NCBI GenBank assembly: GCA_002269645.1
Contig: NIVC01000312.1
Coordinates: 434,001 to 498,000 of the forward strand
DNA length: 64,000 bases
From: Macrostomum lignano
Taxonomy: Eukaryota
Reading direction: 5' to 3'
How positions within the stretch are numbered: position 1 is the stretch's first letter; each line of letters begins with the position of its first letter. Below are positions 4,023-62,384 of the stretch, piece by piece. A program made the translations under genes and the position numbers. The notes beneath the pieces are model-generated. The model did not search any database. It was not told the origin of the DNA and worked only from the letters and a program-made list of their open reading frames with translations.

Positions 4023-4236
4023 ACAGAAACAACAAAAAGTTGAATAAGTGTGTGTAAAATTTGATCTTTTACCACAAACAATTTTTTCTACAAAATCCGT
4101 GAGTGAAAAAATGTGTTTATGTTCACCAAACTGACATAGCAAATTTATGTAGTTAGGGTAAGCTCAAACAAAGGCGTATTTGTCCACAAAGCAATGAACG
4201 CGCATCTTCAACAAGATCATCATTGAGTCATCAATC

Positions 4237-6378
<2,142 letters not shown>

Positions 6379-22675: not shown

Positions 22676-31761
<9,086 letters not shown>

Positions 31762-39920: not shown

Positions 39921-40632
<712 letters not shown>

Positions 40633-41158
40633 GGCAGTTAGTCTGACTGCCTTTTTAATGGTTCATGTCTTTTCAACTAATATGCAGCGCTCTCATTAGG
40701 CATAAAGCACAAACACTAAAAGGTTGAGACACATTCCTTTGCTGCTGCTACAGCTTTACTATGCCCTATTTCTCATACCTAAAAATAGATAAACAATAAA
40801 AAACTTACTACACAAAAAACGCGCTGCAGCCTGTATGACCCGTTCATAAACTTCATTCTAAACTTCCCTTTCTTACCTGCTGGGCGCATTTTCGCATTTT
40901 CATATTGTGGCAGCCATTTCACGGCAATCGCGGTGTTTTCAAATACAAAAGCACAGTTTTTTTCTGATATCTCGCGTCCCACCGCCAGCGGTCTCGTGCG
41001 CGCACCCTACTTTAACTTGGCGCATTCCAAAGTTGAGCTTGAAGACTGGCTGTCTACAGCTTGCCAACACACTGCGGGTTCCAGTTTAAGCCTGACTTGA
41101 CTTGACAGCTCCAGCTGCTTAGCCATTTCATTTGCACCGGTCTCACAGGCAAAAAATA

Positions 41159-41453
41159 ATGCCGAGGCTCTACAGGAAACTTTTCCACCGTCGGCGAAGT
41201 CAAGCTGACGAGGTTGCTAAGAAGAGGCATGGTTGCAAGGCTGATCCCGGATCGGATAGCAGCGACTCCTCTGTGGCTGACGGACTGGATGAGGAGTCGG
41301 CCACCCCCTGTGACACTGACCGCATGCCAGAGCAGCTAAGTGATCAACTGCAGAATGGGTCAGGTGCGAAGCCAGGGCGAAAAAAGAAGAAAAGTGAGTT
41401 GCAAACGGATAGATAGATCAATAAATAGATAGATAGATAGATAGGTAGGTAGG

Positions 41454-41535
<82 letters not shown>

Positions 41536-41540
41536 GATAA

Positions 41541-41635
<95 letters not shown>

Positions 41636-42014
41636 GATAAATAGATAGATAGATAAATAGATAGATAGATAGACAAACAGACAGATGGTTCGCCCTGTTC
41701 CCGAAGATCCCACAGAGCCGTACGTGCCGTCATGCGTCAAAGTTACTCAGCAGGCGCGGTTGAGCTGTCGCTGCTCCTGCGGCTGCAACTGCAGCTCAGA
41801 CCGCAGTTCAGAGTGGCGTCCCCCCCAGCTCAAGCTGTCCAAGTGTGCCGGCGTGTTTCCCAGCATTCTGGCCGCCGGGATGGATGGCGGCGACACGGAC
41901 GAGGACGAGAAGGCGGAGGCCGAGGAGGTGCAACACAGGCGTGACAAGCAGTGGTTCAACTTCCAGCTGGCCAACGGAACTGAGGGCAAGGGCTACCGGC
42001 TGGATCCGCGATGA
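41159..42014 (+). CDS. Putative small uncharacterised 2-exon gene; splicing and frame unresolved
   Basis: Two GC-rich coding-like blocks (41159-41393 ending AAA A|GTGAGT; 41685-42014 after CAG) separated by a GATA-filled intron; phases do not join cleanly. Confidence 0.35.
41408..41684. repeat. (GATA)n microsatellite
   Basis: Tetranucleotide run with occasional AATA/GGTA variants. Confidence 0.98.
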
Positions 42015-42119: not shown

Positions 42120-42560
42120 TATTCACCTTATTCCACTGCTCATTCACCTACTCCATTGCTCATTCACCTACTCCACTGCTCATTCACCTACTCCACTGCT
42201 TATTCACCTACTCCACTGCTCATTCACCTACTCCACTGCTCATTCACCTACTCCACTGCTCATTCACCTACTTCAATGCTCATTCACATACTCCACTGCT
42301 CATTCACCTACACCATTGCTCATTCACCTACTCCACTGCTCATTCACCTACTCCACTGCTCATTTATCTACTCCACTGCTCATTCACCTACTCCACTGCT
42401 CATTTATCTACTCCACTGCTCATTCACCTACTCCACTGCTCATTCACCTACTCCACTGCTCATTCACCTACTCCACTGCTCATTCACCTACTCCACTGCT
42501 CATTCGCCTACTCCACTGCTCATTCACCTACTTCAATGCTCATTCACCCACTTCACTACC
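42120..42560. repeat. 20-bp minisatellite, about 22 copies
   Basis: Unit ctcattcacctactccactg. Confidence 0.95.
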
Positions 42561-43945
42561 CCACCTACTAGTAGTTTCCTATTCTTCATTTCATGGCAAG
42601 AGAACCCGCTGTAATAAGCTTTCCTTAACACTTAAAGCGATATTCTACACCGGGACACTTAAACAACTACACTTCTCGTGACCTGCTCAAACAGAAACGA
42701 ACAGTTAGTTTGCGAAGCTTTTAGCCCCAAGTCTTGATCGTGTTTTCATTAACTTACTTTTTTGATATTTTGGTCACGTTCTTTAGGCATCGATCAACTG
42801 TGTCAACTTAGTTTATTCTCTTGCAAATTATCAATATAAACTTGCTACTGATGCTGGACATCATCTTATGATCCTACTTATAAAATTGAAGCGTTTGTTC
42901 GGTACTGCTTGTACTTTTTTGCATTAGCCACCACGCTTGCGAGACTGGCTCCCTTAGCCTGCAAAGGAAATGAACCGAATGAGACAGTAATTCGGGAAGC
43001 TAATGGAAATTTAGCAAGTATATCGAGTGCTGCATAGATGGAGGTGCCACCAGATAAAATGTCATGAGAGGCTCCCAGTTGGCTTGTATTTTCGCTTTCA
43101 AGCAACTGTCGATGCTTTTTCTGCTTTGAGTAAATGTATGCCCGCGAACTTATCTGATGTTGGAAGAAAAAAATGAAAAAAAGTCCTGACTTTGAAACTT
43201 TGTTTTTCTTAATAGATTTTACAGAATGATTTGCTAAATCGTACAGTGCAACCTGGAGTTTCCACCGCTTTCTAATATCCAGAACTTGGCTTAAAAGTGC
43301 AAAACTTTCTGGTTAGAGCGACTGGAAGGGGAGATTTTTTGGTCCAGAGAGCAACTTCCTCGCCATCCCGAAAAAAATGTCTGTGTTTATTCGGTAAAAC
43401 ATGAAAATATACTCGGCAAGGGCTGAGTCTCCCTGACGGCGAGGTGAATTAATTATATGATTTTTCCCGCAGCTTTGCTCCGCAGGCTGACATTAAAAAA
43501 TTGTTGAGCAAATGGAAAGCCTCTATAGTGCAGCAAGTGAGCACTTCAGCGTCTCGCCTAGCGAAAGGAAATGCTAAGCCATTAAAGGCTCAGAGACACA
43601 GAAAACAGGCGGTTGCCATAATCGGGGCCATCTATCGATTTCGAGTCCGGATAATGCCGCCGTACAGGCAGACAGGCAACGTCCTGGCGCTGCTGGCTTT
43701 TGTAGAGGCAGCGACTGTCTTATAGAGAGCTTATTTAGCGAGAGGTCGACGGACTGTTAGGCGTCTTCAGGGTCTCGCGCGCGATCCAATAGGCTTGGGG
43801 CTGAGTTTCTTTCTCTACCAGCTATTGGTAGAAGCTCGACTTTCGGTGTTCCCCTATTTCTGAATGAAATACTCCGACAGCGGGACATTGTGCGGCCAAG
43901 AAACAAGTAAGAGAATGACTAAATTGATCAGACGGATAGATCAGA

Positions 43946-46900
43946 ATGGCCCGTCGTGGAACTCGAAAACTGTCGAAAAAAGCCAGCATGCCTAACGCAA
44001 GCGGCGCAGCAAGCAATGGAGGCAGCCTGGTGCGCGAGTGTCGCGAAGCGCTACACGATTTTGTTGCCAACTCGAGCATTCGCGGACTTAAACGGACGCT
44101 GTTCTCACCAACTAGGCTATTGCGAGTCTTCTGGACTGTGTTTCTGCTCAGTAGCTTTGTGCTGGCAATGTCTCAGGTTGGTATTGGGGAGGGTTAAACC
44201 TGGCTGCAAGATCATAACTTCTTATCATAAATGCTGTAAAACTTCGAGATGGCATGGTTGACAAGACTTTGCGGGGGTATGGAGTTATGAAAAACTTTAT
44301 GAAAATTAACTAGCAAGACAATGAGCAAACTTTACTTACAACCAACCATTCTTGAAGGTTGCCTTCCTATTGGAGAAGTATTTGAAACGCGAGACCACCG
44401 TTCAGCAGCAGAAGATCTACGGCCACCTGGAAGCCTTTCCCGCGGTGTCCTTCTGCGTGTCTGATCCGTTCTCTGACGGTGCAACGGAACTTTGGTCTAG
44501 CGGCGCCGTCGAGTCACCAAACGAATACAGTCGGAAAGTTCGCCAAGCCGCTCTGCAGCTGATGCGGGCACCAACTCGGGAAAATCAGCAGCTGCTATCG
44601 GCGCTGCTCAGACTGGATCAGAGAGAGGCCTACTTCCAGAATGTGGACAACCTGACCAACCTGATGCAGCTGGGCCACACTCAGCCGTTCTACTTCTGCG
44701 CCATCAACCCGTTTGACCATGGCCAGAAGGTGTTCAAGTACTACGACAGAAACAGTTGCAATCTGACGATGACGCGATGGCTGCATCCCATCTACCTAAA
44801 CTGCTATACGCTAAGCTTCGCCAATCGTGCATTCTCCCAGGCGCTAAAGTCCATCTTTCTGGTGTTGCCGGCTGGTCGTTCCGAGCCGCGCGACGGCTTC
44901 GGGCCGTACGAGAATGCCAGCTTCTTGCGCGACACGCTGAAAAAGTACACCACTATGCAGGTAGTGCTGCACGAGGCGAAGAAGAAGCCAAACTTTGACG
45001 AGACTGTTATGCTCACCGCTCATCAGTCGGATGTGAGTACTATCCTCATCTAATTCTGCTTAACCTAATGGCTACGTATCACTTGAAAAACGACTTATAT
45101 ATGAAACATCGAGATCATTCCGGGTCAAGCGATCAATATGTGTACTCTTAAACTTTATCAGGATTAATGCCACAAGCCTGCACGTACTGAGGTGACTAAT
45201 TTCATGTGATTCCCTCGTCGTAGCGATTTTCTCGACTTATCCCCCGGATTAGCGCCAAGTCACGATTGAGGTGAATTCAGGAAGAGTTCAGTGCGAAAGA
45301 AGGATTAAATGCATCTGAATTAAAGAAAGGGCTTCTCCGACAGAATACAGCTTTGTTTGATTGTCTTTTAAATAAGGAACGGACTGGAGAGCAAATACTC
45401 CAAATACTCCACTTGAACTGGAACAAGGATGTCGGGGACTTCCTATCGAACTGCGTGCCTTCAGCCTGCCGATTCTCGATAAGGCATGCAACGATCACGG
45501 ATGAAACAAAATTTGCGAGGTCAAGTGCAGAGAAATTTTATAGCGTGTCTAATCCGGACGAACCATCGGAATAAACATGAGCGATGCAGGATAGCAAAAA
45601 TTTGCATTTAGAGATTTCAAGTGAGCGACTATCGGCTAGACACAGCGCATGCGCAGTGGCTAAGCTCAGAGGATTATCAGTAAGAAAAAGTCACTCGCAC
45701 TTTACTAGAATGGAAGTCGGACGTCGGCCAAACGTCGATGTACGGGCGTAAAAGTACGAATTTGACAGCGACTTCCACAGAGAAGCAAGCTAACTAAAAC
45801 AAATATTATGTAAATTTTATAAGACCTCAATGCTCTCAGTCTGCAGTAATGCAACAGTAGATATGCTAAAAAGCATGCACACCTTATGTCATTAATATAA
45901 TCCTCGCTTGCACTTCCAAGACAAGCCATGTAAATTTCAGTAATAAAGACGCTGGGAAATGTAAAGAAGCAGAAAAATTGTTTGCATTTTACTGGTGTAG
46001 AGGCTAATTTTTTTTACATATTTTCCTGGCTGTAAATAAAGTGCAGTAGTGTAGTTTGCGTCTGATACACCAACTACCAGATGTAGTTATACGGAAATTT
46101 TAATAATTTTAATCCCAGAGCGAAAACAAAAACAGTAGATGCACAACTTTGGTGTTCTTTTTTAAAGCGGCACATCTATTCTTTCCAATGAATTCAGTCG
46201 TGTGTACGAGCGTATTTTGGGTCATTTCATTCAAAAGTTGTGCGTGATGCACAATAGCAATGCCACTGATTGTCTTACAGTAAAAGGTGAAGTACATACG
46301 CTCGTACACAAAACGGCTCCAATGTACAGTACATCCCTCTCTTACCGTCCACCCCTACTGTGTTGAGTATTTTTTACACTCTGTCACTTGTAAGCAAATC
46401 TCACTGTTTTGCACCTCGCGAAATTTTGCTTAGTCAAGTGTTTTGATTTTTGTGATTATTGACACCATCATGAGTGTGCAATCGAAAAGAAGTCACGGAA
46501 TGCTCAAGCGATGGTAAAAGTGTGTTGCTACAGGTGGAGACTATTTTGAGAAGTCTGCCTTGAAGTTTGATGATGATGATGAATGACTACAGATTGGTTT
46601 CTTTGAGATATTTTTAAACTTCTACTGTAAGACTATCAGTGGCATTGCGATGGTTTTTCAGGCATAACTTTTGAATGAAATGATAATAATACATGCAACT
46701 GAATTCATTGGAAAGAAGAGATGTACCGAGGTCCCGAAAGAGGTCCCCAATGGGGTAAAACCACTATTTCATGTCACTAATACAGGCACTATTAAATCGA
46801 TAAGGAGGCTTAGTAAAACAAGCAGAAGTCTTTCATCCTTTGCATTTAGATTAACGTAATCAGCTTCACGACAAGCAAGTACGTCAACAACGACTGCAGC

Positions 46901-49900
46901 ATCGGCGAGGACGAGCAAAGCGAAGTCGGCGACGCGGAGGTTGGCAACAATCCAAACGACTTCGACGCTTGTCTGGAGCACCGAATCGAGCAGGACGTGA
47001 TTGACAGGTGCGCCTGCACCCAGCGCTTTGGCGCCTTCTCTCTGTTGAGCTGAAGAACAAACCTCTCAGCGAGAACCAGCACGCTTTTCGGGCGGGTCGC
47101 TCCACTGAAAGCGCGCTGCACGTCCTGGTCGATAAACTCGAGAAGGCCGTGCTTGGTAGTGGCTTTGCTCTGGGGATCTTCCTGGACATCATTGGCGCCT
47201 TCGATAACGTCCTCTTTGAGGCGTTCCGAAGAGCTCTTTGTGAGAGGCTAACGCACTCACATCTCACCAGATGGATCATGTACATGATCAGCCATCGCAC
47301 GGCCACCGCCAGTCTGCTGGGCTACCAGAGGACGGTCCCCGTCTGCAAAGGTAGCCCGCAAGGTGGGGTGCTGTCTCCAGTTCTCTGGAATATGGTCATT
47401 GATGAGCTCCTCCGGGATGTTCGGCCTGACCCCATTCTGAAAGTTGGATATGCGGACGATGTCACCGCGGTGGCATCTGGTCCGTCCCCTGATACCCTCA
47501 GGGACCTTCTTCAGAACTTCATCTACGCTGCTGAGCAATGGGCGGACCGCTGTGGTTTAAGGCTCTCTGAGACTAAGACCGCAGCGATCATGTTCACCAG
47601 CAGGACCAAGTGGCAGATTCGGCCGCTCACGCTTTACGGAAGGGAAATCCCCTTCTGCAAGCAGACTAAATGTCTGGGTATTACCCTGGACCACAGGCTG
47701 AACTGGTCTCCCCACGTTCAAACAAAAGCCAAAAAGGCCTTCGCAGTCCTCGCGCAATTGCGCAGGGCCGTCGGCACCACCTGGGGGCTCACCCCCAAGC
47801 GCCTCTGGTGGATCTACACTGCAATGGTTAGGCCCGCTATCTCGTATGGCGGCCTGATCTGGGCTAGCGCCCTGCAGATAAAGACCTGTCTAGAGGCTCT
47901 CAGGAGAGCGCAAGGGCGCGCTTGTCGCACGATCATGAGCGCCCCTCCGTCTGCTCCTTACGATGGCCTCAACGCCTTCCTCAACATTCCTCCGCTGGAC
48001 ATCTTTGTCCGCAGGGAAGCGGCTAAGACTGCCCGCCGTCTAGCTGACGCTGGCATTCGAATCCAGCCCCATAGGGCCATGGCTAAGCGCAAGCTTCTGC
48101 CCCACGCTGACCTCTGCCTCAAGGACTTGAGAGACAGCGGCGGGCTCCACGTCCTATCTGACGGCGAACCCCGCACTCTCAACCTCTTTCAGCGCTACAA
48201 GGTCACCATCCCCTCTAGGGATGCTGCCAATGACCACTGGAATTTCCAGGAGGTCCATTGCTACACGGACGGATCCATCAAAGACGGTCGCGCCGGCTTT
48301 GGGGTCTGCATCATCATCAACGGCCGCGTAATTGCCACGCATGCCCAGCACACTGGTAGACTCTCCACAGTCTTCCAGAACGAAGTCCTTGCCATCAGCT
48401 CTTGCGCTGCAGAGCTAAACGCCAAGGTTACGAGAGGAAAGACTATTGTCATCCACTCCGACAGCCAAGCGGCCTTACAGGCCCTTTGCCACACCACAAC
48501 GAACTCCCGGACAGTCGCCGACTGCGCCCGGCAGCTCAACCTCCTGGCCAGAAGCAATACTGTCAGGCTGAAGTGGATCCCAGGGCACGCAGGGTTTCCG
48601 GGGAACGAGCTGGCAGACACCCTCGCCAAGAGGGGCGGCTCTGGCTCTTTTTTCGGCCCTGCCCCCTGGTCCCTATGCCCTTGACAGTCATCAATCGTCA
48701 GATCGACGACTGGGCTGACTCCCTCCACAGGGACAGATGGGCGGGCACCCAAAACTGCCGGCAATCTCGTGCCGCGGTTCCTTGCCCGTCTCACAGGCTC
48801 AGAAACATCCTTCTGAACCAGAATCGGAAGGATATTCGAGCCCTTGTCATGACCCTTACCGGCCATGGCTACCTCGCCAGGCACTGCTTCCTCCGAGGCG
48901 ACCTCGAGAGCGAAATTTGCCCCTTTTGCGAGTGCGACAATGAAGATGCTCAGCACTTTGTCTGTCACTGCCCTTTCTTTAACAGAGACCGGCTACGCTA
49001 CCTCGGGCCGAACCCGTCCATTGACGAGGTTTGCCAGCCCGACAGCATCCCACGGCTCATCCAGTTCCTTCGGGCGACTAGACGAGCCAGTTTCTTCCCA
49101 ACGGAAGATCACGCTGCAGGACGGACCGGCGGACCACCCTGACCGGCCCCACGCCTCTGCCTGTCTGCGGGCCTTCAGGGGCTAGCGGAATGGGCGACCC
49201 TCGCCTCCCCGCTGTGTCTACGGACCACCCTGCAGCTAAGTCAAGTAAGTCAAGTCAAGACACCATCATGAGTGTGCAATCGAAAAGAAGTCACGGAATG
49301 CTCAAGCGATGGTAAAAGTGTGTTGCTACAGGTGGAGACTATTTTGAGAAGTCTGCCTTGAAGTTTGATGATGATGATGAATGACTACAGATTGGTTTCT
49401 TTGAGATATTTTTAAACTTCTACTGTAAGACTATCAGTGGCATTGCGATGGTTTTTCAGGCATAACTTTTGAATGAAATGATAATAATACATGCAACTGA
49501 ATTCATTGGAAAGAAGAGATGTACCGAGGTCCCGAAAGAGGTCCCCAATGGGGTAAAACCACTATTTCATGTCACTAATACAGGCACTATTAAATCGATA
49601 AGGAGGCTTAGTAAAACAAGCAGAAGTCTTTCATCCTTTGCATTTAGATTAACGTAATCAGCTTCACGACAAGCAAGTACGTCAACAACGACTGCAGCAT
49701 CGGCGAGGACGAGCAAAGCGAAGTCGGCGACGCGGAGGTTGGCAACAATCCAAACGACTTCGACGCTTGTCTGGAGCACCGAATCGAGCAGGACGTGATT
49801 GACAGGTGCGCCTGCACCCAGCGACTAATGCGTACAGACCCGACAGTGCCGTTCTGCTTTGCAATCAACTGGACTAATCTCAACTCGACCGTGTCTAGAA

Positions 49901-50718
49901 TGGACTGCAGTCTGTCTGGCGGCACCTACCTCACCAGTTTCTCGACCGCATCCAAGGCCTGCCCGCGGCCCTGTCAGAGCATCGTGTACGATCTGAACGT
50001 GCTGCGCAGTGCCAATAGAGTGTCGGCGTGGCAGGACTGCTGGTACATGTGGATGCTGATGGATTCCACGGTGACCGCGCAACAAAGAGAGAGCTACTTG
50101 ATGCAGCATCTCAACGCCAGCGGCGACAGCTTCAACGAATCAGTCTGCCGACGCCCCTGGTACCACCAGCTGCCCTACGTGAAGCTGAAGATTGTCCGGC
50201 AAGACTTTACCACCAGGACATTCAATGAGACTCTCGTACTCACCTCAGCGGCTCTCTTTGCTCAGGTGGGAGCGGCGCTGGCCTTCTATCTGGGATTGAC
50301 GCTCACATTTTTAGCCGAGCTGGCCGATCTGGCCATCCGGTTGGGATGGCGGTGTCTCATTAGTAAACGAAAATCCCGGCGTCAGAGAAGAAGACAACGT
50401 CAGAATCAGAACCAGAAACAACAGCAACAGCTGCGGAATCAGCAGAACCAGGCGGAAATAAAGACTGAGTCAACAATAAATTCAGTAGCCTGCAGCAGCG
50501 GCCGCAATGGCGGTGGTCTCTGCATCGCCAACAACTCTGGTCAGGCTGTCGATGTCAGTCTCTCGGGCAGGGAGAACGCCTGGCAGGGCTTCGGACTTCA
50601 TTGCGACTACATCTACGCGGACCAGGACGACTTTTCAGACGATGATGTCGAAGGAGACGCAACCGCGGCGGTGTCCGACGACTTGCGATTGGATTCAGCT
50701 GACTATCGATACATCTAG
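43946..50718 (+). CDS. DEG/ENaC (amiloride-sensitive/ASIC superfamily) channel, about 658 aa if spliced to the downstream acceptor
   Basis: Exons 43946-44176, 44358-45032 and 49648-50718 all join in phase 0; TM1 RVFWTVFLLSS, FPAVSFC, Cys-rich C..Q.VIDRCAC, CPRPC...Y, TM2 LFAQVGAALAFYLGLTLTFLAEL; a duplicate exon start at 46850-47025 runs into the LINE. Confidence 0.9.
46160..46730. repeat. Degenerate inverted-repeat pair (arms about 46160-46285 and 46622-46730) in the DEG/ENaC intron
   Basis: The reverse complement of the left arm (actgtaagacaatcagtggcattgc...acttttgaatgaaatga...ctgaattcattggaaagaa) matches the right arm. Confidence 0.8.
46461..47025. repeat. 565-bp direct duplication, copy 1 (host intron end plus exon start)
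   Basis: Identical by reading to 49259-49823 (offset 2798; ORF track gives identical peptides at 46671/49469 and 46769/49567). Confidence 0.97.
47026..49258 (+). mobile_element. 5'-truncated non-LTR retrotransposon, LOA/R1 group (RT + RNase H + Cys/His knuckle), 2233 bp
   Basis: QHAFRAGRSTE, FLDIIGAFD, GSPQGGVLSPVLWN, GYADD; RNase H YTDGS...NEVLAI...SDSQAAL...WIPGHAGFPGNELAD; after a 1-nt frameshift near 48665, CPFCECDNEDAQHFVCHC; 3' UTR ending in AAGTC-type short repeats. Confidence 0.95.
49259..49823. repeat. 565-bp direct duplication, copy 2
   Basis: Begins right after the LINE tail; contains acceptor TTTAG| at 49647 and continues into the intact remainder of the exon. Confidence 0.97.
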
Positions 50719-50924: not shown

Positions 50925-51483
50925 CTAGACTGGTAGATAAGCCTACAGACTGGTAGATAAGCCTACAGACTGGTAGATAAGTCTACAGACTGGTAGCTAA
51001 GCCTACAGACTGGTAGCTAAGCCTACAGACTGGTAGCTAAGCCTACAGACTGGTAGCTAAGCCTACAGACTGGTAGCTAAACTTACAGACTGGTAGCTAA
51101 GCCTACAAACTGGTAGCTAAGCCTACAGACTGGTAGCTAAGCCTACAGACTGGTAGCTAAGCCTACAGACTGGTAGCTAAGCCTACAGACTGGTAGCTAA
51201 GCCTACAGACTGGTAGCTAAGCCTACAGACTGGTAGCTAAGCCTACAGACTGGTAGCTAAGCCTACAGACTGGTAGCTAAACTTACAGACTGGTAGCTAA
51301 GCCTACAAACTGGTAGATAATTCTACAGACTGGAAGCTAAGCCTACAGACTGGTAGCTAAGCCTACAGGCTGGTAGATAAGCCTACAGGCTGGTAGATAA
51401 GCCTACAGGCTGGTAGATAAGCCTACAGGCTGGTAGATAAGCCTACAGGCTGGTAGATAAGCCTACAGGCTGGTAGCTAAGCC
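50925..51483. repeat. 20-bp minisatellite, about 27 copies
   Basis: Unit agactggtagctaagcctac. Confidence 0.96.
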
Positions 51484-52334: not shown

Positions 52335-52830
52335 TTCTAAGGTTTGGAGATAGAGGTTGGCTTTGACTGGGCGTTGGTTGGCTATGATTGGGTGTTGGCT
52401 CTGATTGGGGGGTTGGCTCTCATTGGGGGTTGGCTCTGGTTGGGGGTTGGCTCTGATTGGGGGTTGGCTATGATTGAGTGTTGGCTCTGATTGGGGGGTT
52501 GGCTCTCATTGGGGGTTGGCTCTGATTAGGGGTTAGCCCTCATTCGGGGTTGGCTCTGATTGGGGGTTGGCTCCGATTGGGGGTTGGCTCTGATTGGGAG
52601 TTGGCCCTGATTAGGGGTTAGCCCTCATTCGGGGTTGGCTCTGATTGGGGGTTGGCTCCGATTGGGGGTTGGCTCTGATTGGAGGGTTGGCTCTGATTGG
52701 GGGTTGGCTCTGATTGGGGGTTGGCTCTGATTGGGGGTTGGCTTTGATTGGGGGGTTGGCTCTGATTGGGGGTTGGCCCTCATTGGGGGTTGGCTCTGAT
52801 TGGGGGTTGGCTCTCATTGGGGGTTGGGCT
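52335..52830. repeat. 17-18-bp G-rich minisatellite
   Basis: Unit ggggttggctctgattgg with variable G-run length. Confidence 0.93.
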
Positions 52831-53683
52831 CGTTATTGGCTTGTTGTATTTCTGTACTGTTTAGTTTCAGTTAGTTTAATCCAAGAAAATACTTTTAGAC
52901 TACTTCAAGTAGGCGGTCCTCCAGATAGACGCCAGGCTCAGCAGACTGTGCAGCCGGTACAGGCTGCTTAGTGGTCGGCACAAAGCCGCAGATCCTGCCG
53001 CAGTTATACTAGAACTATCTGAGCCTCGCAGAGGTTGCGCCACGGCAAAAGCCAACAGTCCGGCGTTGCAAACGGCTAAGAAGGTCACGAGTTCGCGGCC
53101 CGGTCGGTCCCGAAAATGCAACGCCTTATAGGAGCGCATTCGAGCGGCAGTGCAGATTAGCGTTGTCTGGCAGGCAGCCTGGGTTGAAACAGATTCAATA
53201 GTTTCATTACATTCTGAGAAAACTCATCGTCAGGGGTGATCGTCGTCGGCTCTCTCTCACCTGAACAATTTGCACAACCGCCGTAGCCGCTGTTTCCCAA
53301 TTGGCGTCCTGCTGCTGTGGCTGTAGCAGCTGCACGATGCTGTGAGCGAACAGTCCGAACAGCCCCACCGCCTGTACCCATCTGTCGGCAAAGCGAGCCT
53401 CGTCTCTCCCAGTCGACTCGTCCGCCTCCAGGAACATGAGGTCGGCCAGGCGGGGAAAGGCGCACAGGCAGGCGGCCAGGCCGCAGCCCAGCAGGCCCAG
53501 CTCGGCGCTGTGACTCAGCAGGCTGCCAGCTCGGGAGTGGCTCTCTGTCTGGCCGAGGACGCAGGCGGCCAGCAGGCAGGCGCAGGCGGTCACCAGCGCG
53601 GCCAGGCCGAGGAACAGACCGCGTCTGGAGCCGGAGCAGTCCAACCAGAGCCGCCAGCTGCCGCGACGGCCGCCATGGACGTC

Positions 53684-54835
53684 TTCTTCTTCAGTCCTTT
53701 TCTCGCCTCGCGGCGTGGACGCTCTGCCGCCGACTCACTGGCAGGTCTTTCGATGTCTGGCCATGTTCGTGCGGGCCAGCATCCTCCCGCAGTCCGGGCA
53801 CGGAGCTCTGGCGCTCTTGTAGATCCGCGCCGTAATCCCCGTCGTCTGCTGGCCTCTCCCCGTTGGTACTGCTGCTTCTTCTGCCCTCTCGTCCGGTGTC
53901 GCGCCCGCCTCTGGTTTCCTTCCGTTCTCCTTGCACCGTTTCCTATGCCGCGCGTGGTTGGACTTGCTTATCCACTTGTTGCACTCTCCGCAGTGGACTT
54001 CTTTCGCCGATCGCTCCTCTCCTCCGCACCTCTTCTGGTGGTTTTTTCTTGTCGCCTCCGTGAAGAAGGTAGCGTTGCACTTTAGGCACGGCAGCGGTGT
54101 CTTCGTAAATTGATGGTGTATCCTCCGTTGGTGTACGGCTAACCCGGCTCTCGACGCGCACACCTTCCCGCAGTTCTCGTAATTGCACCTGTACCCGGTC
54201 AGCTCCGATTCCACTTCTCCGGCTTCTCTTTCCTGTGCTGTTTCTTCCTCAGTCGTCTCTGCTTTCTTTCCTTTCTTCCTCTCGCTCTCCTCCAGCGCTC
54301 TTTCCCTGATGCGTAACTTCTTTCTCCAAGCCTCTCTCTCGGTCACCAGCCTTTCGACCTCCAGCTCATCGATTTCTGCCGTGCGCAGTAGCTTTCTCCA
54401 TACCGAGATGATGGTCTGCCTTCTCTTCCGCGCTTTCTTGATGGTAGTCAGCTTCTTGCTCCAGCCGAGGACACATCTTTTGACGGTGCTGGTATCCGGG
54501 AGTCTGAGTACGTGGCCTAGCCTGCGCCAGTGGGCCGATTCGACTTTGGCGCCGATGCTTCGGACCCGCAGTTCGTTCCGCACGTCCCACATGTTCACTT
54601 TTTTTCTCTCCATTTCTTTTAGCGGTGGTTCGGTCTTGCTGCTCCACACGTACCGATAACGACGGTCCATTGCCTGCTGCATCCGCTTAATTTCCGACTT
54701 GTGGAAGGGCCGGGCGCCTGCATTGAAGAGCATCGTGCTCTCAACACAGGTCTCTATGATCCTAGCTTGGGTGCGTTTGCTTAGTCGTGTTTTGCGTAGC
54801 ATGCATTTGACTCCCGCCCACGCTTTGGCAGCTCT
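53684..54835 (-). mobile_element. 5'-truncated RTE-like non-LTR retrotransposon with C-terminal zinc fingers, 1152 bp
   Basis: Exact 11-bp TSD CCATGGACGTC (53673-53683 and 54836-54846); GAAGAAGAA tail; intact 355-aa ORF 54802-53735 with post-RT motifs (STMLF, WRRLGHVLRL) and four Cys/His fingers. Confidence 0.93.
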
Positions 54836-55619
54836 CCATGGACGTCATCGACATCGACATCAACATCGTCCTCATCGTTGTCGCGGACTTCGACCCCGGC
54901 GCCGATGGACTGGCGAAGTCGTTGACGACGTTGCAGCAGCATCAGCAGACGGCTGCCAGGGGCAACCACGGAGACGGTGGGGAACGTGCCGCTTTGAACT
55001 GCGAGCAAAATTGCTGCGGGGTTGAGGTGTTAAAAGACAGGAAATGTCGAAATAACAGCGAGTTAAGGCTTGAGACATGGCCCGAGGATCTTGAGATACA
55101 TAAAAGCGCGCCAATACACAGCACGCACTCACAGGGTTTACAGCGGCCCTTTGACTTTCTAATCGTCAGGCATGTACACACTCTGTGCCTTGGGGGTTCC
55201 TTTGGGGTTCTCTGCTCCTTAATAACGTGAGCTGATTCTTCATGAACGAATTGATTATTGATCTGTATACCTGAGAAAAACTTACAAACAGTTAATAGGC
55301 AGTGAACAACAGCAGTGGGCATCAGATATGGCTCAGCAATCATCGCGGATCCGCCAGAGTTTAACAAAGTCAGCTTCAAGCAGTTAGCCGATAAACTACT
55401 ATGAGTAGCGACTCCGCTTGCGTTGGCACTCGCAGAAGCGGCTGCTCCAAAAAGCCAGTTGTCGATGGTTGAGAATCGCAGCCACGAGCAGAGATTTGCC
55501 GAGATGAGGTGCGCCAGGCCCAGGTGCACTGTCAGGGCGCTGCGCTGTGCAAGGCCTCGTATGTGGAACTGCGTGAGTGGGAGAGGATGGGAGTGATTGA
55601 AAGGAACTGAGAGTAAATA

Positions 55620-56580
55620 GAGAGGTTTAGTGTAAATGGCAGGCCATGAGAGTGAATGAGAGACAGTGAGAGTGATTGGGATACAGTGAGAGTGAATGGA
55701 AGACAGTGGGGGCAAATGGAAGGCAGTGGGAGTGAATGGAAGACAGTGGGGGCAAATGGAAGGCAGTGAGAGTGAATGGCAGGCCATGAGAGTGAATAGG
55801 AGATTGTGAGAGTGAATGGAAGGCAGTGAGAGTGAATATGAGATAGTGAGAGTGAATGGAAGGCAGTGAGAGTGAATGGGAGGTAGTGAGAGGGAATGGG
55901 AGGTAGTGAGAGTGAATGGAAGACAGTGGGGGCAAATGGAAGGCAGTGGGAGTGAATGGAAGACAGTGGGGGCAAATGGAAGGCCATGAGAGTGAATGGG
56001 AGGAAGTGAGAGTAAATGGCAGGCAGTGAGAGTGAAAGGGAAGAAGTGAGAGTAAATGGCAGGCCATGAGAGTGAATGGGAGGAAGTGAGAGTAAATGGC
56101 AGGCCATGAGAGTGAATAGGAGATTGTGAGAGTGAATGGAAGGCAGTGAGAGTGAATATGAGATAGTGAGAGTGAATGGAAGGCAGTGAGAGTGAATGGG
56201 GGGTAGTGAGAGTGAATGGGAGGTAGTGAGAGTGAATGGGAGGTAGTGAGAGTGAATGGGAGGTAGTGAGAGTGAATGGGAGGTAGTGAGAGTGAATGGG
56301 AGGTAGTGAGAGTGAATGGGAGGTAGTGAGAGTGAATGGGAGGTAGTGAGAGTGAATGGGAGGTAGTGAGAGTGAATGGGAGGTAGTGAGAGTGAATGGG
56401 AGGTAGTGAGAGTGAATAGGAGATTGTGAGAGTGAATGGAAGGTAGTGAGAGTGAATATGAGATAGTGAGAGTGAATGGAAGGCAGTGAGAGTGAATGGG
56501 AGGTAGTGAGAGTGAATGGGAGGTAGTGAGAGTGAATGGGAGGTAGTGAGAGTGAATGGAACGTAATGAGAGTGGATGGG
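55620..56580. repeat. GA-rich about 20-bp minisatellite in an otopetrin intron
   Basis: Core unit gtagtgagagtgaatgggag with variants and a duplicated higher-order block (about 55780-55900 vs 56100-56220). Confidence 0.95.
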
Positions 56581-57114
56581 AGCGGCTGTGAAAAGAAAAT
56601 AAGAAAAACTAGAAAGAGGATGTATTTGAGAATTTCAATGAGGGATTCTTGAACTCATCGAACAATAAACCAATGTTTGCGATAAGCACTAGCTCCACAA
56701 TGATGCTTCAAAGCTTACGAGATAGCTTACAATGGTTTTTCCTGAAATAACCTGGCAGTATTTAGTGCCATTTTCAAACCTCCAAATCTCTCACCTGAGC
56801 ATTTAGGACCGCAAACACCGTCTGTAAAGCGATGAAAATTGACCCAGTGATCAACTGAGTAATCGACAGGCGCCTCCAGCCCAGACAGGGGGCTCCCATT
56901 CCGTCTGCTGACAGCGAAGTCAAATGCAGCAGCTGACGAACTACCGAGAGAGCGCACAGACCTTGATAAAAATGCACAGAATTAGTTGATTTTAGTCATT
57001 TATCGACGTTAACTAATATACTCGTAAATTAACAATGCACTCGAATCCTTCATCCATTTTGATTATTAATTTGCAGTCCAAAGGTCATCAATGTCAAAGT
57101 CACCTTGACATCAA

Positions 57115-57457
57115 TTCAAGATGTCAAGGCTTACTGGGGGAATTGCAGAGATGACAAGGCTTACTGGGGGAATTGCTGAGATGTCAAGGCTTACTGGGGT
57201 AATTGCTGAGATGTCAAGGCTTACTGGGGGAATTGCTGAGATGTCAAGGCTTACTGGGGGAATTGCTGAGATGTCAAGGCTTACTGGGGGAATTGCTGAG
57301 ATGTCAAGGCTTACTGGGGGAATTGCTGAGATGTAAAGGCTTACTGGGGGAATTTCTGAGAAGTCAAGGCTTACTGGGGTAATTGCTGAGAAGTCAAGGC
57401 TTACTGGGGTAATTGCTGAGATGTCAAGGCTTACTGGGGGAATTGCTAAGATGTCAG
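57115..57457. repeat. 30-bp tandem repeat, about 11 copies
   Basis: Unit atgtcaaggcttactgggggaattgctgag. Confidence 0.96.
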
Positions 57458-58119
57458 GGCAAAAAGAATACAATAATTTTCGCCCCCGGCTTAGTGGCCG
57501 CCCCAAGGCGGGCACAGGATTGCTGGTTCGTTTTCTAATCGTTAAGTTTTTACACTCTACGCCTTGGGGGTTGGCCATATTTCCACAAATTAAGCTACAA
57601 ATTAATGTAGAACCAGGTGTCGCGGTGCAACAGTCAGACGCGTTTATCTCTGAGCTGCTTTGCCCACTCTTAACCATTTATTAACACTATAGATTAGAAG
57701 AACAATAAACATTTCTAATCTATATTCTGTACCAATTACTTTACTTGCAGTTTGGCTCTAATTACCTGGCTCAGCTGGCTTCATCAGACCGCCATAATGC
57801 GCACATATTCATTTTCAGCGCATGAACCTTCTGTAGGTGTTGACTCACAGCGTGTTGCCCCAGTCCCCCAAGCCTGCTCCCCCCTGATATTTTCCAAACC
57901 ATTAGGATAGATAAAAGCTTGATTTTTTTCCTCTACATTTTGCCATTTCGTCCAACTCGCAGTGTGTGTGCCTCTCTGTCCCCTCACGTTCCCACACAGT
58001 CAGTCATCCCCCCGACCGTCCCTTCCCTAGGCGGCGAAGTTGAAAGCACAAGCAATTTATCCCGAAAGTGTGTCGGTCTTCGCCATGGAGACCCAAAGCC
58101 TACCAGGGGATAGGAGCGC

Positions 58120-58875
58120 CCATCAAGAGACAGGGGCGGCCACCAAGAGACAGGGGTGCCCAACAAGAGACAGGGACGCCCACTAAGGGACAGGGGCTCC
58201 TACCAAGGGACAGAGCTAAGTGCCCACCGAGAGACAGGGGCGCCCACCAAGAGACAGGGGCTCCCACCAAGAGACAGGGGCGCCCACTAAGAGACAGGGG
58301 CGCCCACTAAGAGACAGGGGCGCCCACTAAGAGACAGGGCGCCCACCAAGAGACAGGGGCTCCCACCAAGAGACAGGGGCGCCCACCAAGAGACAGGGGC
58401 GCCAACCAAGAGACAGGGGCTCCCACCAAGAGACAAGGGCGCCCACCAAGAGACAGGGGCGCCCACTAAGAGACAGGGGCGCCCACTAAGAGACAGGGGC
58501 TCCCACCAAGAGACAGGGGCGCCCACCAAGAGACAGGGGCGCCCACCAAGAGACAGGGGCACCCACCAAGAGACAGGGGCGCCCACCAAGAGACAAGGGC
58601 GCCCACTAAGAGACAGGGGCGCCCACTAAGAGACAGGGGCACCCACCAAGAGACAGGGGCTCCCACCAAGAGACAGGGCGCCCACCAAGAGACAGGGGCT
58701 CCCACCAAGAGACAAGGGCGCCCACCAAGAGACAGGGGCGCCCAACAAGAGACAGGGGCGCCCATCAAGAGACAGGGGCGACCCACCAAGAGACAGGGAC
58801 GGCCACCAACAAACAGGGGCGCCCACCGAGAAACAGGGGCGTCCACCGAGAAACAGGGGCGCCCACCAAGGGACA
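58120..58875. repeat. 20-bp GC-rich minisatellite
   Basis: Unit gagacaggggcgcccaccaa. Confidence 0.96.
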
Positions 58876-59805
58876 GGCGGGTGACAGCTAAAAAAAACTG
58901 AATTCGGGGTGTGCTTGAAACTCCAGGTTTGGGTTGGAGATGTCCATGGCATCTATTTTGGAAGCGTGTCTACACGGAGCTTGACACGGGTGTCTGCATG
59001 GGCCAGCCAGAGCTCCACGCGCAGGTCCTGCATTTTTTCCTGCTTCAGTTCATCCTGCCACCAAAGAAGCGTGACTTGCCAGGCGCTTAGGCGCTCGGCA
59101 TATAAAATAAACAGTTAGAATTTTCGAAGTCAAGGCAAACTGACCGCCGAATTGATTTTTTTCTTTCTCTCTCCCCCCTCTCTCTCTCTCAAATCGAAAT
59201 CTAAGCAAAACATTTTCTGCGAAACCTAAAAACCAAGCGCGGTGAATCATAAAAATGGAAAGAAGCGAAATTGCGCTTCAGGTTTTTTTAAATATAAAAA
59301 GCAACATTTTTAACATCGGAAAGTTTAAAAAACTCGTCCTACAATTCTGGCCATTCTGCGGACTCCTGATACTGTACGCGGGCACTCACTTATACACACG
59401 CTCACACAGGGTGTACATCGGTCCTGACTTTCTAATCGTCAGGCATGTACACTCTCTGTGTCTTTGGAGTTGACCCAAATGAATGTACGAGCGCCCGCGG
59501 ATAACTTTTTTAATATAAAACAGTCCCCTGCAAAAGCACCTGGAATATTTAACCATATTTATAATTGATACACAAAGAGGCCACTACAGCCGGAGGCTAA
59601 AAATGCTTATTCATGTAAACAAAGCCGGAAAATTAGTGGGAGTTCGATGCAGTTTTATCTCGATGTGTGGTCATTTGGTTATGCCTGTGCAGCCTGAATG
59701 TTTACAAATTAAGTTTAGGATCTACAGATTACAAATGGCTTACTGTCTATTACACTGTTTTATTTCATTGCTGTATTGCGGTGTCCTTATTTCAGACTTT
59801 GGCGC

Positions 59806-59982: not shown

Positions 59983-59999
59983 CTTGTTCCCCTGTTACT

Positions 60000-60260
60000 T
60001 TCTCTAGATGAGCTGGTAAGGGTCTCTAGATGAGGCTGTCAATTGTCTCTATATGGGCTGTCTAGGATCTCTAGATGGACTGACAAGGGTCATTAGATAA
60101 GTTGTCAAAGATCTCTTTTGATGGGCTGTCAATTTAATTGTCGCTAGATGGACTGTCAAGGATGTCTAGACGGGCTATCAAGGATCTCTAGATGGGCCGT
60201 CAAGTGTCTCTAGATGGGCTGTTAAGGGTCTCTAGACGGGCTGTCAAGAATCTCTAGATC
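60000..60260. repeat. Degenerate copies of the 22-bp CTCTAGATGGGCTGTCAA repeat
   Basis: Diverged units such as ctctagatggactgacaagggt. Confidence 0.75.
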
Positions 60261-61440
60261 GCGAAATAAATCTATTCATTACAATTTTTGCGTTGAATAA
60301 AGTTAGAAAATCATCCTACACGGAAAAAAAGTCATGAAGCCACTAAGTCTCTTCAAGTAAAAGCAACAGTCATCAAGAAATTTCTATTATTTTTCCTCTG
60401 TGGCAGACGCAGAGGTCGCTTGGTTGCTTTGACAAAGGACGCCGCCTATGCAGCAAACACATTCTCCCATCCTGTTCCCATCTGCGTCCTGTCATCCCTC
60501 CAATGCCCCTCTCCCTCTCTCCCCTCTCCATCTCGTCTCTTTCCAAGACAAAAAAGCCAAGCAGCAACAAAAAACATGGCGTGGCAGATTTTTCAGAACG
60601 TCTGGCGCTGGGGAAGCACGGAATCGGGGCTGCAGGCGATGAGTCACATGAGGGGGATTTCAAAAAAAAATATTCCACAATCCTCGACATTAAAAAGCGA
60701 TATAGCTTGCTTGTGTTGGAGAGTGAGAAAATGCTGGGAACATTTTCCCTCTAGCGGACAAATTAGCTGGCAAAGCCAACTGAATGTTGTATTTATGGGT
60801 CTTGATTTACATCTAAGCACGGTGGGCTGCTGGTTGCTGCTTTGGACAAGATGCTCGCCAATGATAGCGGAATGCGCAGAACGGCCTCAGCTAACTGAAT
60901 TAAATTGAAAACTTTAGAAAAGTTGGTATACAAAAAGTGCAATCATAGCCCACTGTGGGAGAGATTCAGTGTGTATTTTCAATTCTTCACGGTCCACTAC
61001 CCTGGGCTGATCCCACCGTCTCCATGGGAATCTCTCCTGGGGATTGCCGGGCGTTGCAAAGCAGCTTTAGCTTAGGGATCAAAGTTGCTTTCAAATCGAT
61101 ATAAGTTCATTTATTTGCCATTTTCACTGTTGAGGATCAGAGTCTACTTGCGAGTGGAGCTGGAAAAATGCATTTAATATTTCCACTTTTGATTGAATTA
61201 AACTTTGCAATTTGATTTTTCTCAATGAAGGATCTTGACTCGTATTTATCGATTTTGCTTGTAACCAAGGCAAATATTGATTGTATTTTGTTGTCAAAGG
61301 CTCAAGGCTTTTTTTGATTGTAAGATGAGTGCTCTGGATTTAATATACGGTGTCAGGATCGCTAGGATACTGATGATAGTCTTTAGATTAATGGTCAGGA
61401 TCCTATAGATCTTTTATCGGGGTCTTAAGATGGATTTTCA

Positions 61441-61980
61441 GGGTCTCTAGATGGGCTGTCAATTGTCTCTAGATGGGCTGTCAATTGTCTCTAGATGGGC
61501 TGTCAATTGTCTCTAGATGGGCTGTCCATTGTCTCTAGATGGGCTGTCAATTGTCTCTAGATGGGCTGTCAATTGTCTCTAGATGGGCTGTCCATTGTCT
61601 CTAGATGGGCTGTCAATTGTCTCTAGATGGGCTGTCAATTGTCTCTAGATGGGCTGTCAATTGTCTCTAGATGGGCTGTCAATTGTCTCTAGATGGGCTG
61701 TCCATTGTCTCTAGATGGGCTGTCAATTGTCTCTAGATGGGCTGTCAATTGTCTCTAGATGGGCTGTCCATTGTCTCTAGATGGGCTGTCAATTCTCTAG
61801 ATGGGCTGTCAATTGTCTCTAGATGCGCTGTCCATTGTCTCTAGATGGGCTGTCAATTGTCTCTAGATGGGCTGTCAATTGTCTCTAGATGGGCTGTCAA
61901 TTGTCTCTAGATGGGCTGTCAATTGTCTCTAGATGGGCTGTCAATTGTCTCTAGATGGGCTATCAAGGATCTCTAGATGG
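61441..61980. repeat. 22-bp minisatellite, about 24 copies
   Basis: Unit ctctagatgggctgtcaattgt. Confidence 0.96.
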
Positions 61981-62384
61981 TCAAGGCTTCTATAAGTTGT
62001 CAGATGCGTATTGATATGTTGAAATTACTGAATAATTCAGTATTGTATTATTATTTATGATGCAAATAAACTCAGCTTGAGATTGCATTTGCTAGGCAAA
62101 ATCTGCCTGATTTGGAACACTTTGATGCTAAAGTATTTCTGACTTGGCATGGAAACTGATCTATAATACATATATCACTGTCAGCATGTGACTCCTGTTT
62201 CTGACCCAGCTGTCGCAACTCATCAACTCATCGTTGATCTCATATCCATGACGCAGTCTGCATCGCTTTTTCATCAGAGCTGAAATTCAGACACTGGGAT
62301 AAGATCTGAGACAGTCGTTTTTACTTTAACCTCTTCAAGACGGTGAAGATATTCTCAAGTAAGCCAATTTCGTATACTTAGGTA

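What the first reader, a model, noticed from the sequence alone, without database searches (positions are those of the whole stretch)
46461..49823. LINE inserted in a coding exon with a 565-bp flanking duplication that rebuilds the splice acceptor and exon start
Seen: host sequence 46461-47025 is repeated, apparently without mismatch, at 49259-49823, bracketing a 2233-bp 5'-truncated LINE. The duplicate includes the intron end, the TTTAG acceptor and the first 176 nt of the DEG/ENaC exon. Splicing 45032 to 46850 gives a stop 10 codons after the junction (TGA at 47051-47053); splicing 45032 to 49648 gives a full-length channel. Established: LINE TSDs are usually under about 20 bp. Inference: an extremely staggered target-primed insertion or repair-coupled duplication that makes an exonic insertion potentially self-rescuing, leaving two identical competing acceptors that may tune channel dosage via NMD or truncation. 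If a family trait, it is an undescribed harm-avoidance and exon-duplication mechanism.
Basis: partly seen in the sequence, partly recalled or inferred. Interest (0 to 1): 0.85.

Follow-up and report, generated by a model that had tools for sequence, protein, structure and literature searches.

The report
LINE insertion with 565-bp target duplication
A young, 5'-truncated LINE retrotransposon sits in the last coding exon of a flatworm (Macrostomum lignano-like) sodium-channel gene and is flanked by a perfect 565-bp duplication that recreates the splice acceptor and exon start; this is a rare natural example of the "large target-site duplication" already known from human L1 experiments, not a new mechanism.

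Summary
Window 46461-47025 and 49259-49823 are identical (565/565) and directly abut a 2233-bp LINE fragment (47026-49258, + strand: partial RT, RNase H, CCHC region, TAAGTCAAG-repeat tail). Homology to an independent relative confirms both element boundaries. The duplicate holds 389 nt of intron end, the TTTAG acceptor and 176 nt of the terminal exon of a three-exon, 658-aa DEG/ENaC gene. The best explanation is target-primed reverse transcription. The bottom strand was nicked at 46460/46461 and the top-strand break fell 565 bp downstream, which gives a very large TSD. This is not undescribed. L1 TSDs over 100 bp, up to several kb, are documented in cultured cells, and those authors noted that exons can be duplicated. 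The "self-rescue" reading is structurally possible, because splicing 45032 to 49648 restores the full ORF, but it is untested. The upstream acceptor gives a truncated product. A strong donor in the LINE tail (49245 GTAAGT) could make that isoform an NMD target. The host is a neopolyploid with about three paralogous gene copies, so tolerance needs no rescue. I could not test whether long TSDs are a family trait or obtain read-level support for the assembly. The finding is a new member of a known kind, of moderate interest.

The parts
43946..44176 (+). DEG/ENaC gene, exon 1 (ATG to donor CAG|GTTGGT)
   Evidence: part of the PF00858 match
44358..45032 (+). DEG/ENaC gene, exon 2 (acceptor TTGAAG|, donor GAT|GTGAGT at 45032/45033)
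46168..46728 (.). Imperfect inverted repeat in intron 2. The arms are 46168-46286 and 46619-46728 (~119 nt, 79% identity) with a ~330-nt spacer. The priming site at 46460/61 lies near the middle of the spacer. The right arm is copied again at 49417-49526.
   Evidence: (DNA fold z = -12.5)
46428..46440 (+). Host motif GCTTAGTCAAGTG that resembles the LINE 3' tail (11/13 match), 21-33 nt upstream of the priming site
   Evidence: post-hoc observation
46461..47025 (+). Target-site duplication, copy 1: 389 nt of intron end, the TTTAG acceptor, and the first 176 nt of exon 3 (46850-47025)
47026..49258 (+). 5'-truncated non-LTR retrotransposon, 2233 bp. Components: partial RT (~47044-47682), RNase H (~48250-48636), a 1-nt frameshift in a C5 run (~48663-48667), a C-terminal CCHC-type region (~48690-49142) and a 3'UTR (49143-49258).
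47051..47053 (+). TGA stop met in the host reading frame if acceptor 1 (46850) is used. The product would be 369 aa and lack the C-terminal half of the channel, including TM2.
49235..49258 (+). LINE 3' tail GCTAAGTCAAGTAAGTCAAGTCAAG (TAAGTCAAG repeats). It contains a consensus 5' splice donor, CAA|GTAAGT, at 49245-49250.
49259..49823 (+). Target-site duplication, copy 2, identical to copy 1 and continuous with the rest of exon 3
49648..50718 (+). DEG/ENaC gene, intact exon 3 (the terminal exon, ending in a stop at 50716-50718)

Best explanation
This is a recent germline insertion of an APE-type, RNase H-bearing LINE by target-primed reverse transcription, and it generated an unusually large target-site duplication. 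The inferred steps are as follows. (1) The bottom strand of intron 2 was nicked between window positions 46460 and 46461. The exposed 3'-OH primed reverse transcription from the LINE RNA's TAAGTCAAG-repeat tail, with at most 1 nt of overlap. (2) cDNA synthesis stopped or was cut off inside the RT-coding region, which accounts for the 5' truncation. (3) The top strand was broken 565 bp downstream, at 47025/47026 inside exon 3, rather than the usual 7-20 bp away. This break could have come from the element's endonuclease, a pre-existing nick or replication intermediate, or break-induced replication. (4) The cDNA end was joined to that distant end, and both 565-nt single-stranded stretches were filled in, giving two identical copies of the intron end, acceptor and exon start on either side of the LINE. 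The consequence, read from the sequence and not measured, is that the gene now has two identical 3' splice sites. Splicing 45032 to 49648 treats copy 1 plus the LINE as extra intron and yields the normal 658-aa channel. Splicing 45032 to 46850 yields a 369-aa truncated product. If the GTAAGT donor in the LINE tail (49245) is then spliced to 49648, the stop is followed by an exon junction about 2.2 kb downstream, and the mRNA becomes NMD-eligible. The structure is shown. The mechanism is inferred from TPRT logic and from the published large-TSD L1 events. Splice usage is unknown.
For: The 565-bp direct repeat is perfect and abuts both ends of a single insert. The insert is a LINE, with RT and RNase H domains. 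Its closest relatives are Macrostomum LINE proteins at 61-63% identity. A more distant relative, L002, shows the full ORF1-APE-RT-RNH architecture. The 3' junction falls exactly at the family's native terminus: relative L001 shares the 3'UTR motif and TAAGTCA-type repeats and then diverges into unrelated flank. The 5' junction falls inside the RT, and homology to L001 begins exactly at 47026. The orientation fits TPRT geometry, since the LINE tail adjoins the upstream boundary of the duplicated segment. The element is young: its ORF is intact apart from one homopolymer frameshift, and the copies differ at 0 of 565 sites. Precedent exists for L1 TSDs from over 100 bp to several kb, and for L1-bridged tandem duplications.
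Against: I could retrieve no empty allele, raw reads or second assembly, so the structure rests on one assembled sequence from a repeat-rich neopolyploid in which 36% of the reference assembly length lies in chimeric scaffolds. The endonuclease's target preference is unknown, so the first-nick site cannot be checked against a consensus. The 5'-junction microhomology cannot be scored without a full-length copy of the same family. There are no expression data.
Confidence: 0.75

Rival explanations
1. Assembly artefact. In the assembly graph the two junctions form a loop (A to LINE to A). The assembler may have traversed this loop wrongly, or stitched reads from different paralogous or haplotypic loci that carry independent insertions of the same LINE family. 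Under this reading no single chromosome carries A-LINE-A.
For: The host is M. lignano-like. Its reference assembly was built from noisy PacBio reads and polished with multi-mapping short reads. It has about 3 paralogous subgenomes, 36% of its length in chimeric scaffolds, and 93% of read pairs multi-mapping. Polishing could erase differences between the copies. I could obtain no independent sequence of the locus.
Against: Both junctions (47025|LINE 5' end and LINE tail|46461) must exist in real molecules. Explaining them without a duplication requires two independent insertions of the same low-copy LINE within 565 bp on different paralogues. Paralogues differ by about 2.2%, so about 12 mismatches are expected in 565 bp (Poisson P(0) about 4e-6, ignoring polishing), yet none is seen. 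The window has no N gaps and no other such duplication. A 2.8-kb loop is shorter than typical long reads.
Confidence: 0.13
2. A DNA-level event, not retrotransposition. A 565-bp tandem duplication formed by replication template switching (MMBIR/FoSTeS) or by double-strand-break repair, with a piece of a genomic LINE copy captured at the duplication junction.
For: The end product, a tandem duplication with an insertion at the junction, is also the signature of replicative template switching. Microhomology at the junctions is at most 1 nt or cannot be determined. An inverted repeat that could stall replication flanks the upstream breakpoint.
Against: A DNA-templated capture would have arbitrary breakpoints in the LINE. 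Here one breakpoint coincides exactly with the element's native 3' terminus and tail repeats, and the other is a 5' truncation. This is the asymmetric pattern specific to TPRT. The sense-strand geometry also fits priming at 46460/61.
Confidence: 0.06
3. A two-step history. An ordinary short-TSD LINE insertion into exon 3 was followed by a separate duplication or gene-conversion event that copied 565 bp of upstream sequence to the LINE's 3' side.
For: None specific. It would also give A-LINE-A.
Against: It requires the second event to end exactly at the LINE's insertion point and to start exactly at the LINE's 3' terminus. No residual short TSD is visible: host sequence resumes at 49824 precisely where copy 1 stops at 47025. 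The perfect identity of the copies and the youth of the LINE fit a single event.
Confidence: 0.03

Closest known systems
Large target-site duplications of human LINE-1 in cultured cells (Gilbert et al. 2002/2005; Symer et al. 2002; Servant et al. 2017, PMC5223499)
   Same: A single 5'-truncated LINE insert with its native 3' end, flanked by a direct duplication of hundreds of bp to several kb. The cause is attributed to a second-strand break far from the first nick. The authors note that exons can be duplicated and that the long repeats could later recombine.
   Different: Those are engineered L1 events in human cell lines, most frequent when NER is defective. This case is an apparently germline-resident insertion of an RNase H-bearing, repeat-tailed LINE in a flatworm, and the duplication happens to include a splice acceptor and exon start.
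L1-mediated tandem duplications in cancer genomes (Rodriguez-Martin et al. 2020, PMC7058536; Mendez-Dorantes et al., bioRxiv 2024.12.14.628481)
   Same: A LINE insert lies at the junction of a direct tandem duplication. The 1-10-kb cases are explicitly regarded as 'large TSDs'.
   Different: Those events are somatic, often far larger (up to 22.6 Mb), and explained by sister-chromatid bridging or break-induced replication. This duplication is only 565 bp and sits in a normal genome.
Canonical TPRT insertions of LINEs (TSD 7-18 bp for L1, 7-15 bp for RTE; Ichiyanagi & Okada 2008 as cited in PMC6007223)
   Same: The 5' truncation, native 3' tail at the junction, direct flanking repeat, and sense geometry of nick and priming are all shared.
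   Different: The TSD is about 30-80 times longer than the clade-typical ranges.
C. elegans RTE-1 (Youngman et al. 1996), which I recall as flanked by a long (~200 bp) duplication
   Same: If my recollection is right, it is a naturally occurring non-L1 LINE with a TSD of hundreds of bp, inserted in a gene.
   Different: This comes from my memory only. I could not verify it in the held library. RTE lacks RNase H and belongs to a different clade.

Membership tests
Non-LTR (LINE) retrotransposon copy made by target-primed reverse transcription | Encodes a LINE-type reverse transcriptase | tested here: met
   RVT_1 at 4.9e-24 and RNase_H at 1.3e-14. The best relatives are LINE ORF2-like proteins.
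Non-LTR (LINE) retrotransposon copy made by target-primed reverse transcription | Insert ends at the element's native 3' terminus (tail) while the 5' end is variably truncated | tested here: met
   The 3'UTR and TAAGTCA repeats are shared with L001 and are followed by unrelated flank. Homology to the L001 RT starts at 47026, inside the RT.
Non-LTR (LINE) retrotransposon copy made by target-primed reverse transcription | Direct duplication of target DNA immediately flanking the insert | tested here: met
   565/565 identical, abutting both ends.
Non-LTR (LINE) retrotransposon copy made by target-primed reverse transcription | Endonuclease (APE or RLE) encoded by the family, and a nick site matching its preference | tested here: inconclusive
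   This copy lacks the 5' part. The distant relative L002 has Exo_endo_phos_2 upstream of the RT. The family's cleavage preference is unknown. A tail-like motif lies 21-33 nt upstream of the nick.
Non-LTR (LINE) retrotransposon copy made by target-primed reverse transcription | An empty (pre-insertion) site with one copy of the duplicated segment exists | not testable with these tools
   No same-species sequence was retrievable.
Large-TSD LINE insertion (TSD >100 bp) | TSD over 100 bp around a single, otherwise canonical, insertion | tested here: met
   564-565 bp. The definition and precedent come from PMC5223499.
RNase H-bearing LINE clades (I / Nimb / Ingi / Tad-like group) | RNase H domain downstream of the RT, followed by a C-terminal Cys/His motif | tested here: met
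   RNase_H at residues 415-543 of the ORF. The motif CPFCECDNEDAQHFVCHC lies in the downstream frame and is conserved in P0001 and P0003.
RNase H-bearing LINE clades (I / Nimb / Ingi / Tad-like group) | Phylogenetic placement of the RT within a named clade | not tested
   No reference clade set was available in the tools, so the clade is left unassigned.
DEG/ENaC (amiloride-sensitive sodium channel) gene | Full-length match to the ASC family profile across the spliced ORF | tested here: met
   PF00858 at 1e-28, profile positions 1-454 of 455, using acceptor 2. No close orthologue was found by the word-index search.
False duplication from assembly error | Duplication adjacent to gaps, or copies diverged as alleles or paralogues are | tested here: not met
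   There are no Ns in the window, and 0 of 565 mismatches against about 2.2% paralogue divergence. Polishing could mask divergence.
False duplication from assembly error | No single read spans the structure | not testable with these tools
   Raw reads are not available.

The most novel reading that the evidence does not exclude
Long TSDs could be a regular property of this flatworm LINE family, for example because its second-strand cleavage is weak or delayed. Combined with the consensus 5' splice donor in every copy's TAAGTCAAGTAAGT tail, sense insertions into exons would then routinely be converted into skippable or NMD-targeted cassettes. That would be a built-in way of blunting insertional damage and of generating exon and splice-site duplications.
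Probability: 0.06. Interest if true: 0.7.

Novelty: new member of a known kind. Interest (0 to 1): 0.35.

Why it matters
If read-level data confirm it, this is a clean natural example, outside mammals and outside the L1 clade, that TPRT can duplicate hundreds of bp of target. It also shows that such a duplication can regenerate a splice acceptor and exon start, so an exonic insertion need not destroy the gene. This links a phenomenon known mainly from cell-culture and cancer L1 events to ordinary genome evolution, including exon and splice-site duplication and the creation of alternative 3' splice sites. It gives a directly testable locus for how identical, competing acceptors are chosen. It does not reveal a new mechanism. 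The host's roughly three-fold gene redundancy means the allele could persist even if the insertion is simply a knockout.

Tried and rejected
(1) I looked for the same locus, an empty allele, or other copies of the LINE. Self-BLAST found no second copy in the window. Exact-protein look-ups of window ORFs found nothing. An exact 44-mer across the uninterrupted exon gave 0 hits in metagenome contigs. The search for related loci with the LINE protein returned only one weak 47% fragment. Look-ups of the M. lignano UniRef relatives P0002 and P0004 were not on record. As a result I could not survey TSD lengths across the family.
(2) An orthologue search with the channel protein gave no hits at E<=1e-5.
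(3) I considered whether the intronic inverted repeat explains the nick position. The nick lies mid-loop of an inverted repeat with ~119-nt arms and a ~330-nt spacer. With so long a spacer and only one case, I treat this as incidental.
(4) I considered 3' transduction, with copy 2 carried along in a read-through LINE transcript. I rejected it because it would need a source LINE immediately upstream of 46461, where there is none. It would also need the insertion to land exactly where the transduced segment ends.
(5) I considered a tandem duplication of the whole 2798-bp unit. I rejected it because no second LINE follows copy 2.
(6) Literature searches for natural long TSDs in non-L1 clades did not confirm my recollection about C. 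elegans RTE-1.
Full report
OBSERVATION. The claimed repeat is real. Window 46461-47025 and 49259-49823 are identical at all 565 positions, and the match extends on neither side. A whole-window self-comparison shows it is the only long, exact, dispersed repeat in the 64 kb. Every other repeat is a tandem minisatellite array. The window contains no Ns. The first base of the repeat (G) could equally be the last base of the LINE tail (...TCAAG), so the duplication is 564-565 bp.

THE INSERT. The 2233 bp between the copies (47026-49258) carry, on the + strand, an ORF with RVT_1 (4.9e-24) and RNase_H (1.3e-14) domains. A Cys/His region (CPFCECDNEDAQHFVCHC) follows in a second frame. Comparison with the closest protein relatives shows the two frames are separated by a single 1-nt frameshift in a C5 run near 48663-48667. 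Otherwise the reading frame is open, which indicates a young copy.

The closest relatives are LINE-like proteins of Macrostomum lignano and of a JGI environmental contig, at 61-63% identity. A more distant relative, L002, shows the complete architecture: ORF1, APE endonuclease, RT, RNase H and a microsatellite tail.

The independent relative L001 fixes both ends of the element. At the 3' end it shares the motif GCGGAATGGGCG...CCCTGCAGCTAAGTCAAGTAAGTCA and then runs into unrelated flank, so 49258 is the native terminus. At the 5' end the window follows host sequence through ...CACCCAGCG (47025) and tracks the L001 RT-coding sequence from 47026 onward. The truncation point is just upstream of the QHAFRxGRS motif. 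The window holds no other copy of this LINE.

THE HOST GENE. The surrounding gene is a three-exon DEG/ENaC channel gene. The exons are 43946-44176, 44358-45032 and 49648-50718, and the product is 658 aa. The spliced product matches PF00858 over the whole profile at 1e-28. Exon 3 is the terminal exon.

Splicing 45032 to 46850 gives TGA at 47051-47053. That is the 10th codon from the host/LINE junction and 67 codons after the splice junction. The product would be 369 aa and would lack the second transmembrane segment. Splicing 45032 to 49648 gives the full protein.

ORGANISM. A neighbouring GOLPH3 exon is 99% identical to the M. lignano protein, and the next-best hit is 74%. The window is therefore from M. 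lignano or a very close relative. According to the genome papers, this genome is more than half repetitive. It consists of three paralogous subgenomes about 2.2% diverged. It was assembled from noisy PacBio reads with short-read polishing, and 36% of the assembly length lies in chimeric scaffolds.

MECHANISM. The geometry is that of target-primed reverse transcription. The LINE's native 3' tail adjoins the upstream boundary of the duplicated segment, so the bottom strand was nicked at 46460/46461 and primed cDNA synthesis there. The truncated 5' end adjoins the downstream boundary, so the top strand was broken at 47025/47026, 565 bp away. Filling in the two single-stranded stretches yields the duplication.

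A DNA-level template switch or capture event would not be expected to break exactly at the element's 3' terminus. A two-step history needs two exact coincidences. 3' transduction would require a source element that is not present. I therefore favour a single TPRT event with a distant second-strand break (confidence about 0.75). What caused the distant break cannot be decided from one locus. Candidates are the element's endonuclease, a pre-existing nick or replication intermediate, or break-induced replication.

ASSEMBLY ARTEFACT. This is the main rival, at about 0.13, because of the nature of this genome. Three points count against it. Both junctions must exist physically. A join between paralogues should show about 12 mismatches in 565 bp (Poisson P(0) about 4e-6), yet none is seen, although polishing could homogenise the copies. 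And the 2.8-kb loop is shorter than long reads. With zero differences, the 95% upper bound on divergence between the copies is about 0.5%. That is well below the roughly 2% between subgenomes, so a real event would postdate subgenome divergence.

COMPARISON WITH WHAT IS KNOWN. Typical LINE TSDs are 7-18 bp for L1 and 7-15 bp for RTE, so 565 bp is far outside the norm. It is not unprecedented, however. TSDs over 100 bp occur in up to about 10% of recovered L1 events in HeLa cells. In NER-deficient cells they have a median of about 1.5 kb and reach 5-6 kb. Those authors attribute them to a distant second nick and explicitly remark that exons may be duplicated and that the long repeats may later recombine.

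In cancer genomes and L1-expressing clones, L1 inserts sit at the junctions of tandem duplications from 1-10 kb ('large TSDs') up to 22.6 Mb. What is new is the setting: a resident insertion in a flatworm, from an RNase H-bearing, repeat-tailed LINE. The specific outcome is also new, namely regeneration of a splice acceptor and exon start.

FUNCTIONAL READING (inference). The two acceptors and their 389 upstream nucleotides are identical, so the choice between them depends on position and kinetics. I cannot determine it here. The stop at 47051 would lie in the last exon, so classical EJC-dependent NMD needs a further downstream splice. The best donor-like site anywhere between the two acceptors is CAA|GTAAGT at 49245, inside the LINE tail. 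By a rough consensus matrix of my own it scores above both genuine donors of the gene. Splicing 49244 to 49648 would place an exon junction about 2.2 kb downstream of the stop. That would make the isoform a conventional NMD target.

'Self-rescue' via 45032-49648 is thus possible but unproven. It is also unnecessary to explain persistence of the allele in a genome with about three copies of most loci. Because 38.8% of M. lignano genes are SL trans-spliced, the second acceptor might also accept a spliced leader. This is speculation.

WHAT COULD NOT BE DONE. I could retrieve no same-species sequence, no empty allele and no further genomic copies of the family. The 'family trait' question and read-level validation therefore remain open.

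VERDICT. The finding is a new member of a known kind (a large-TSD LINE insertion) and is of moderate interest.

Noticed in passing
window 46428-46440 (host) versus 49235-49247 (LINE tail): The host intron reads GCTTAGTCAAGTG 21-33 nt upstream of the priming site, an 11/13 match to the LINE's own tail GCTAAGTCAAGTA. Such matches are rare in the window: about 1.8 are expected by chance over both strands, and apart from one minisatellite locus only one other occurs. This could reflect target preference or an older tail remnant. It is a post-hoc observation, with p roughly 0.01.
   Followed up: partly
window 46168-46286 and 46619-46728 (copied again at 49417-49526): An imperfect inverted repeat lies in intron 2, with ~119-nt arms at 79% identity and a ~330-nt spacer. 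It folds strongly as single-stranded DNA (z = -12.5). The LINE priming site lies close to the centre of the spacer. No other copies of the arms occur in the window.
   Followed up: partly
window 49245-49250: The LINE's TAAGTCAAG-repeat tail contains a consensus 5' splice donor (CAA|GTAAGT), and relative L001's tail has GTAAGT too. Every sense-oriented copy of this family would therefore bring a strong donor into its host transcript.
   Followed up: partly
window 48663-48667: The only defect in the LINE ORF is a 1-nt frameshift in a C5 homopolymer. It could be a real mutation or a long-read homopolymer error in the assembly.
   Followed up: no
window 8384-9534 (- strand): A piggyBac-type transposase (PF13843 DDE_Tnp_1_7, 5e-34 and 9e-13) is split over two overlapping ORFs. 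It is likely a frameshifted or domesticated copy.
   Followed up: partly
window 53735-54802 (- strand): A 355-aa ORF has a retroelement-like N-terminal part and several C2H2-like zinc-finger motifs. Its only Pfam hit is a weak zf-C2H2 match. It may be the C-terminal fragment of a different retroelement, unrelated to the LINE at 47 kb.
   Followed up: no
window 2647-4024, 23438-23629, 39926-40652, 41408-41686, 42121-42569, 50927-51483, 52355-52839, 55573-56582, 57119-57460, 58098-58877, 59992-61980, 62354-63073: The window has an unusually high density of minisatellite arrays. One is a 20-bp x 28 array (50927-51483) about 200 bp downstream of the channel gene's stop codon. This fits the reported 15% simple and tandem repeats in M. 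lignano.
   Followed up: no
window 26384-31761 (+ strand): Exons of a PLC-gamma-like gene are present, with PI-PLC-X, SH2, PI-PLC-Y and C2 domains. A GOLPH3 exon at 4237-4737 (-) is 99% identical to M. lignano and identifies the organism.
   Followed up: partly
window 43946-50718 (channel protein): The 658-aa DEG/ENaC protein found no relative at E<=1e-5 in the word-indexed search of 5.8 billion proteins, even though M. lignano UniRef proteins are in that database. The gene may be unannotated in the older proteome, or it may be very divergent.
   Followed up: no
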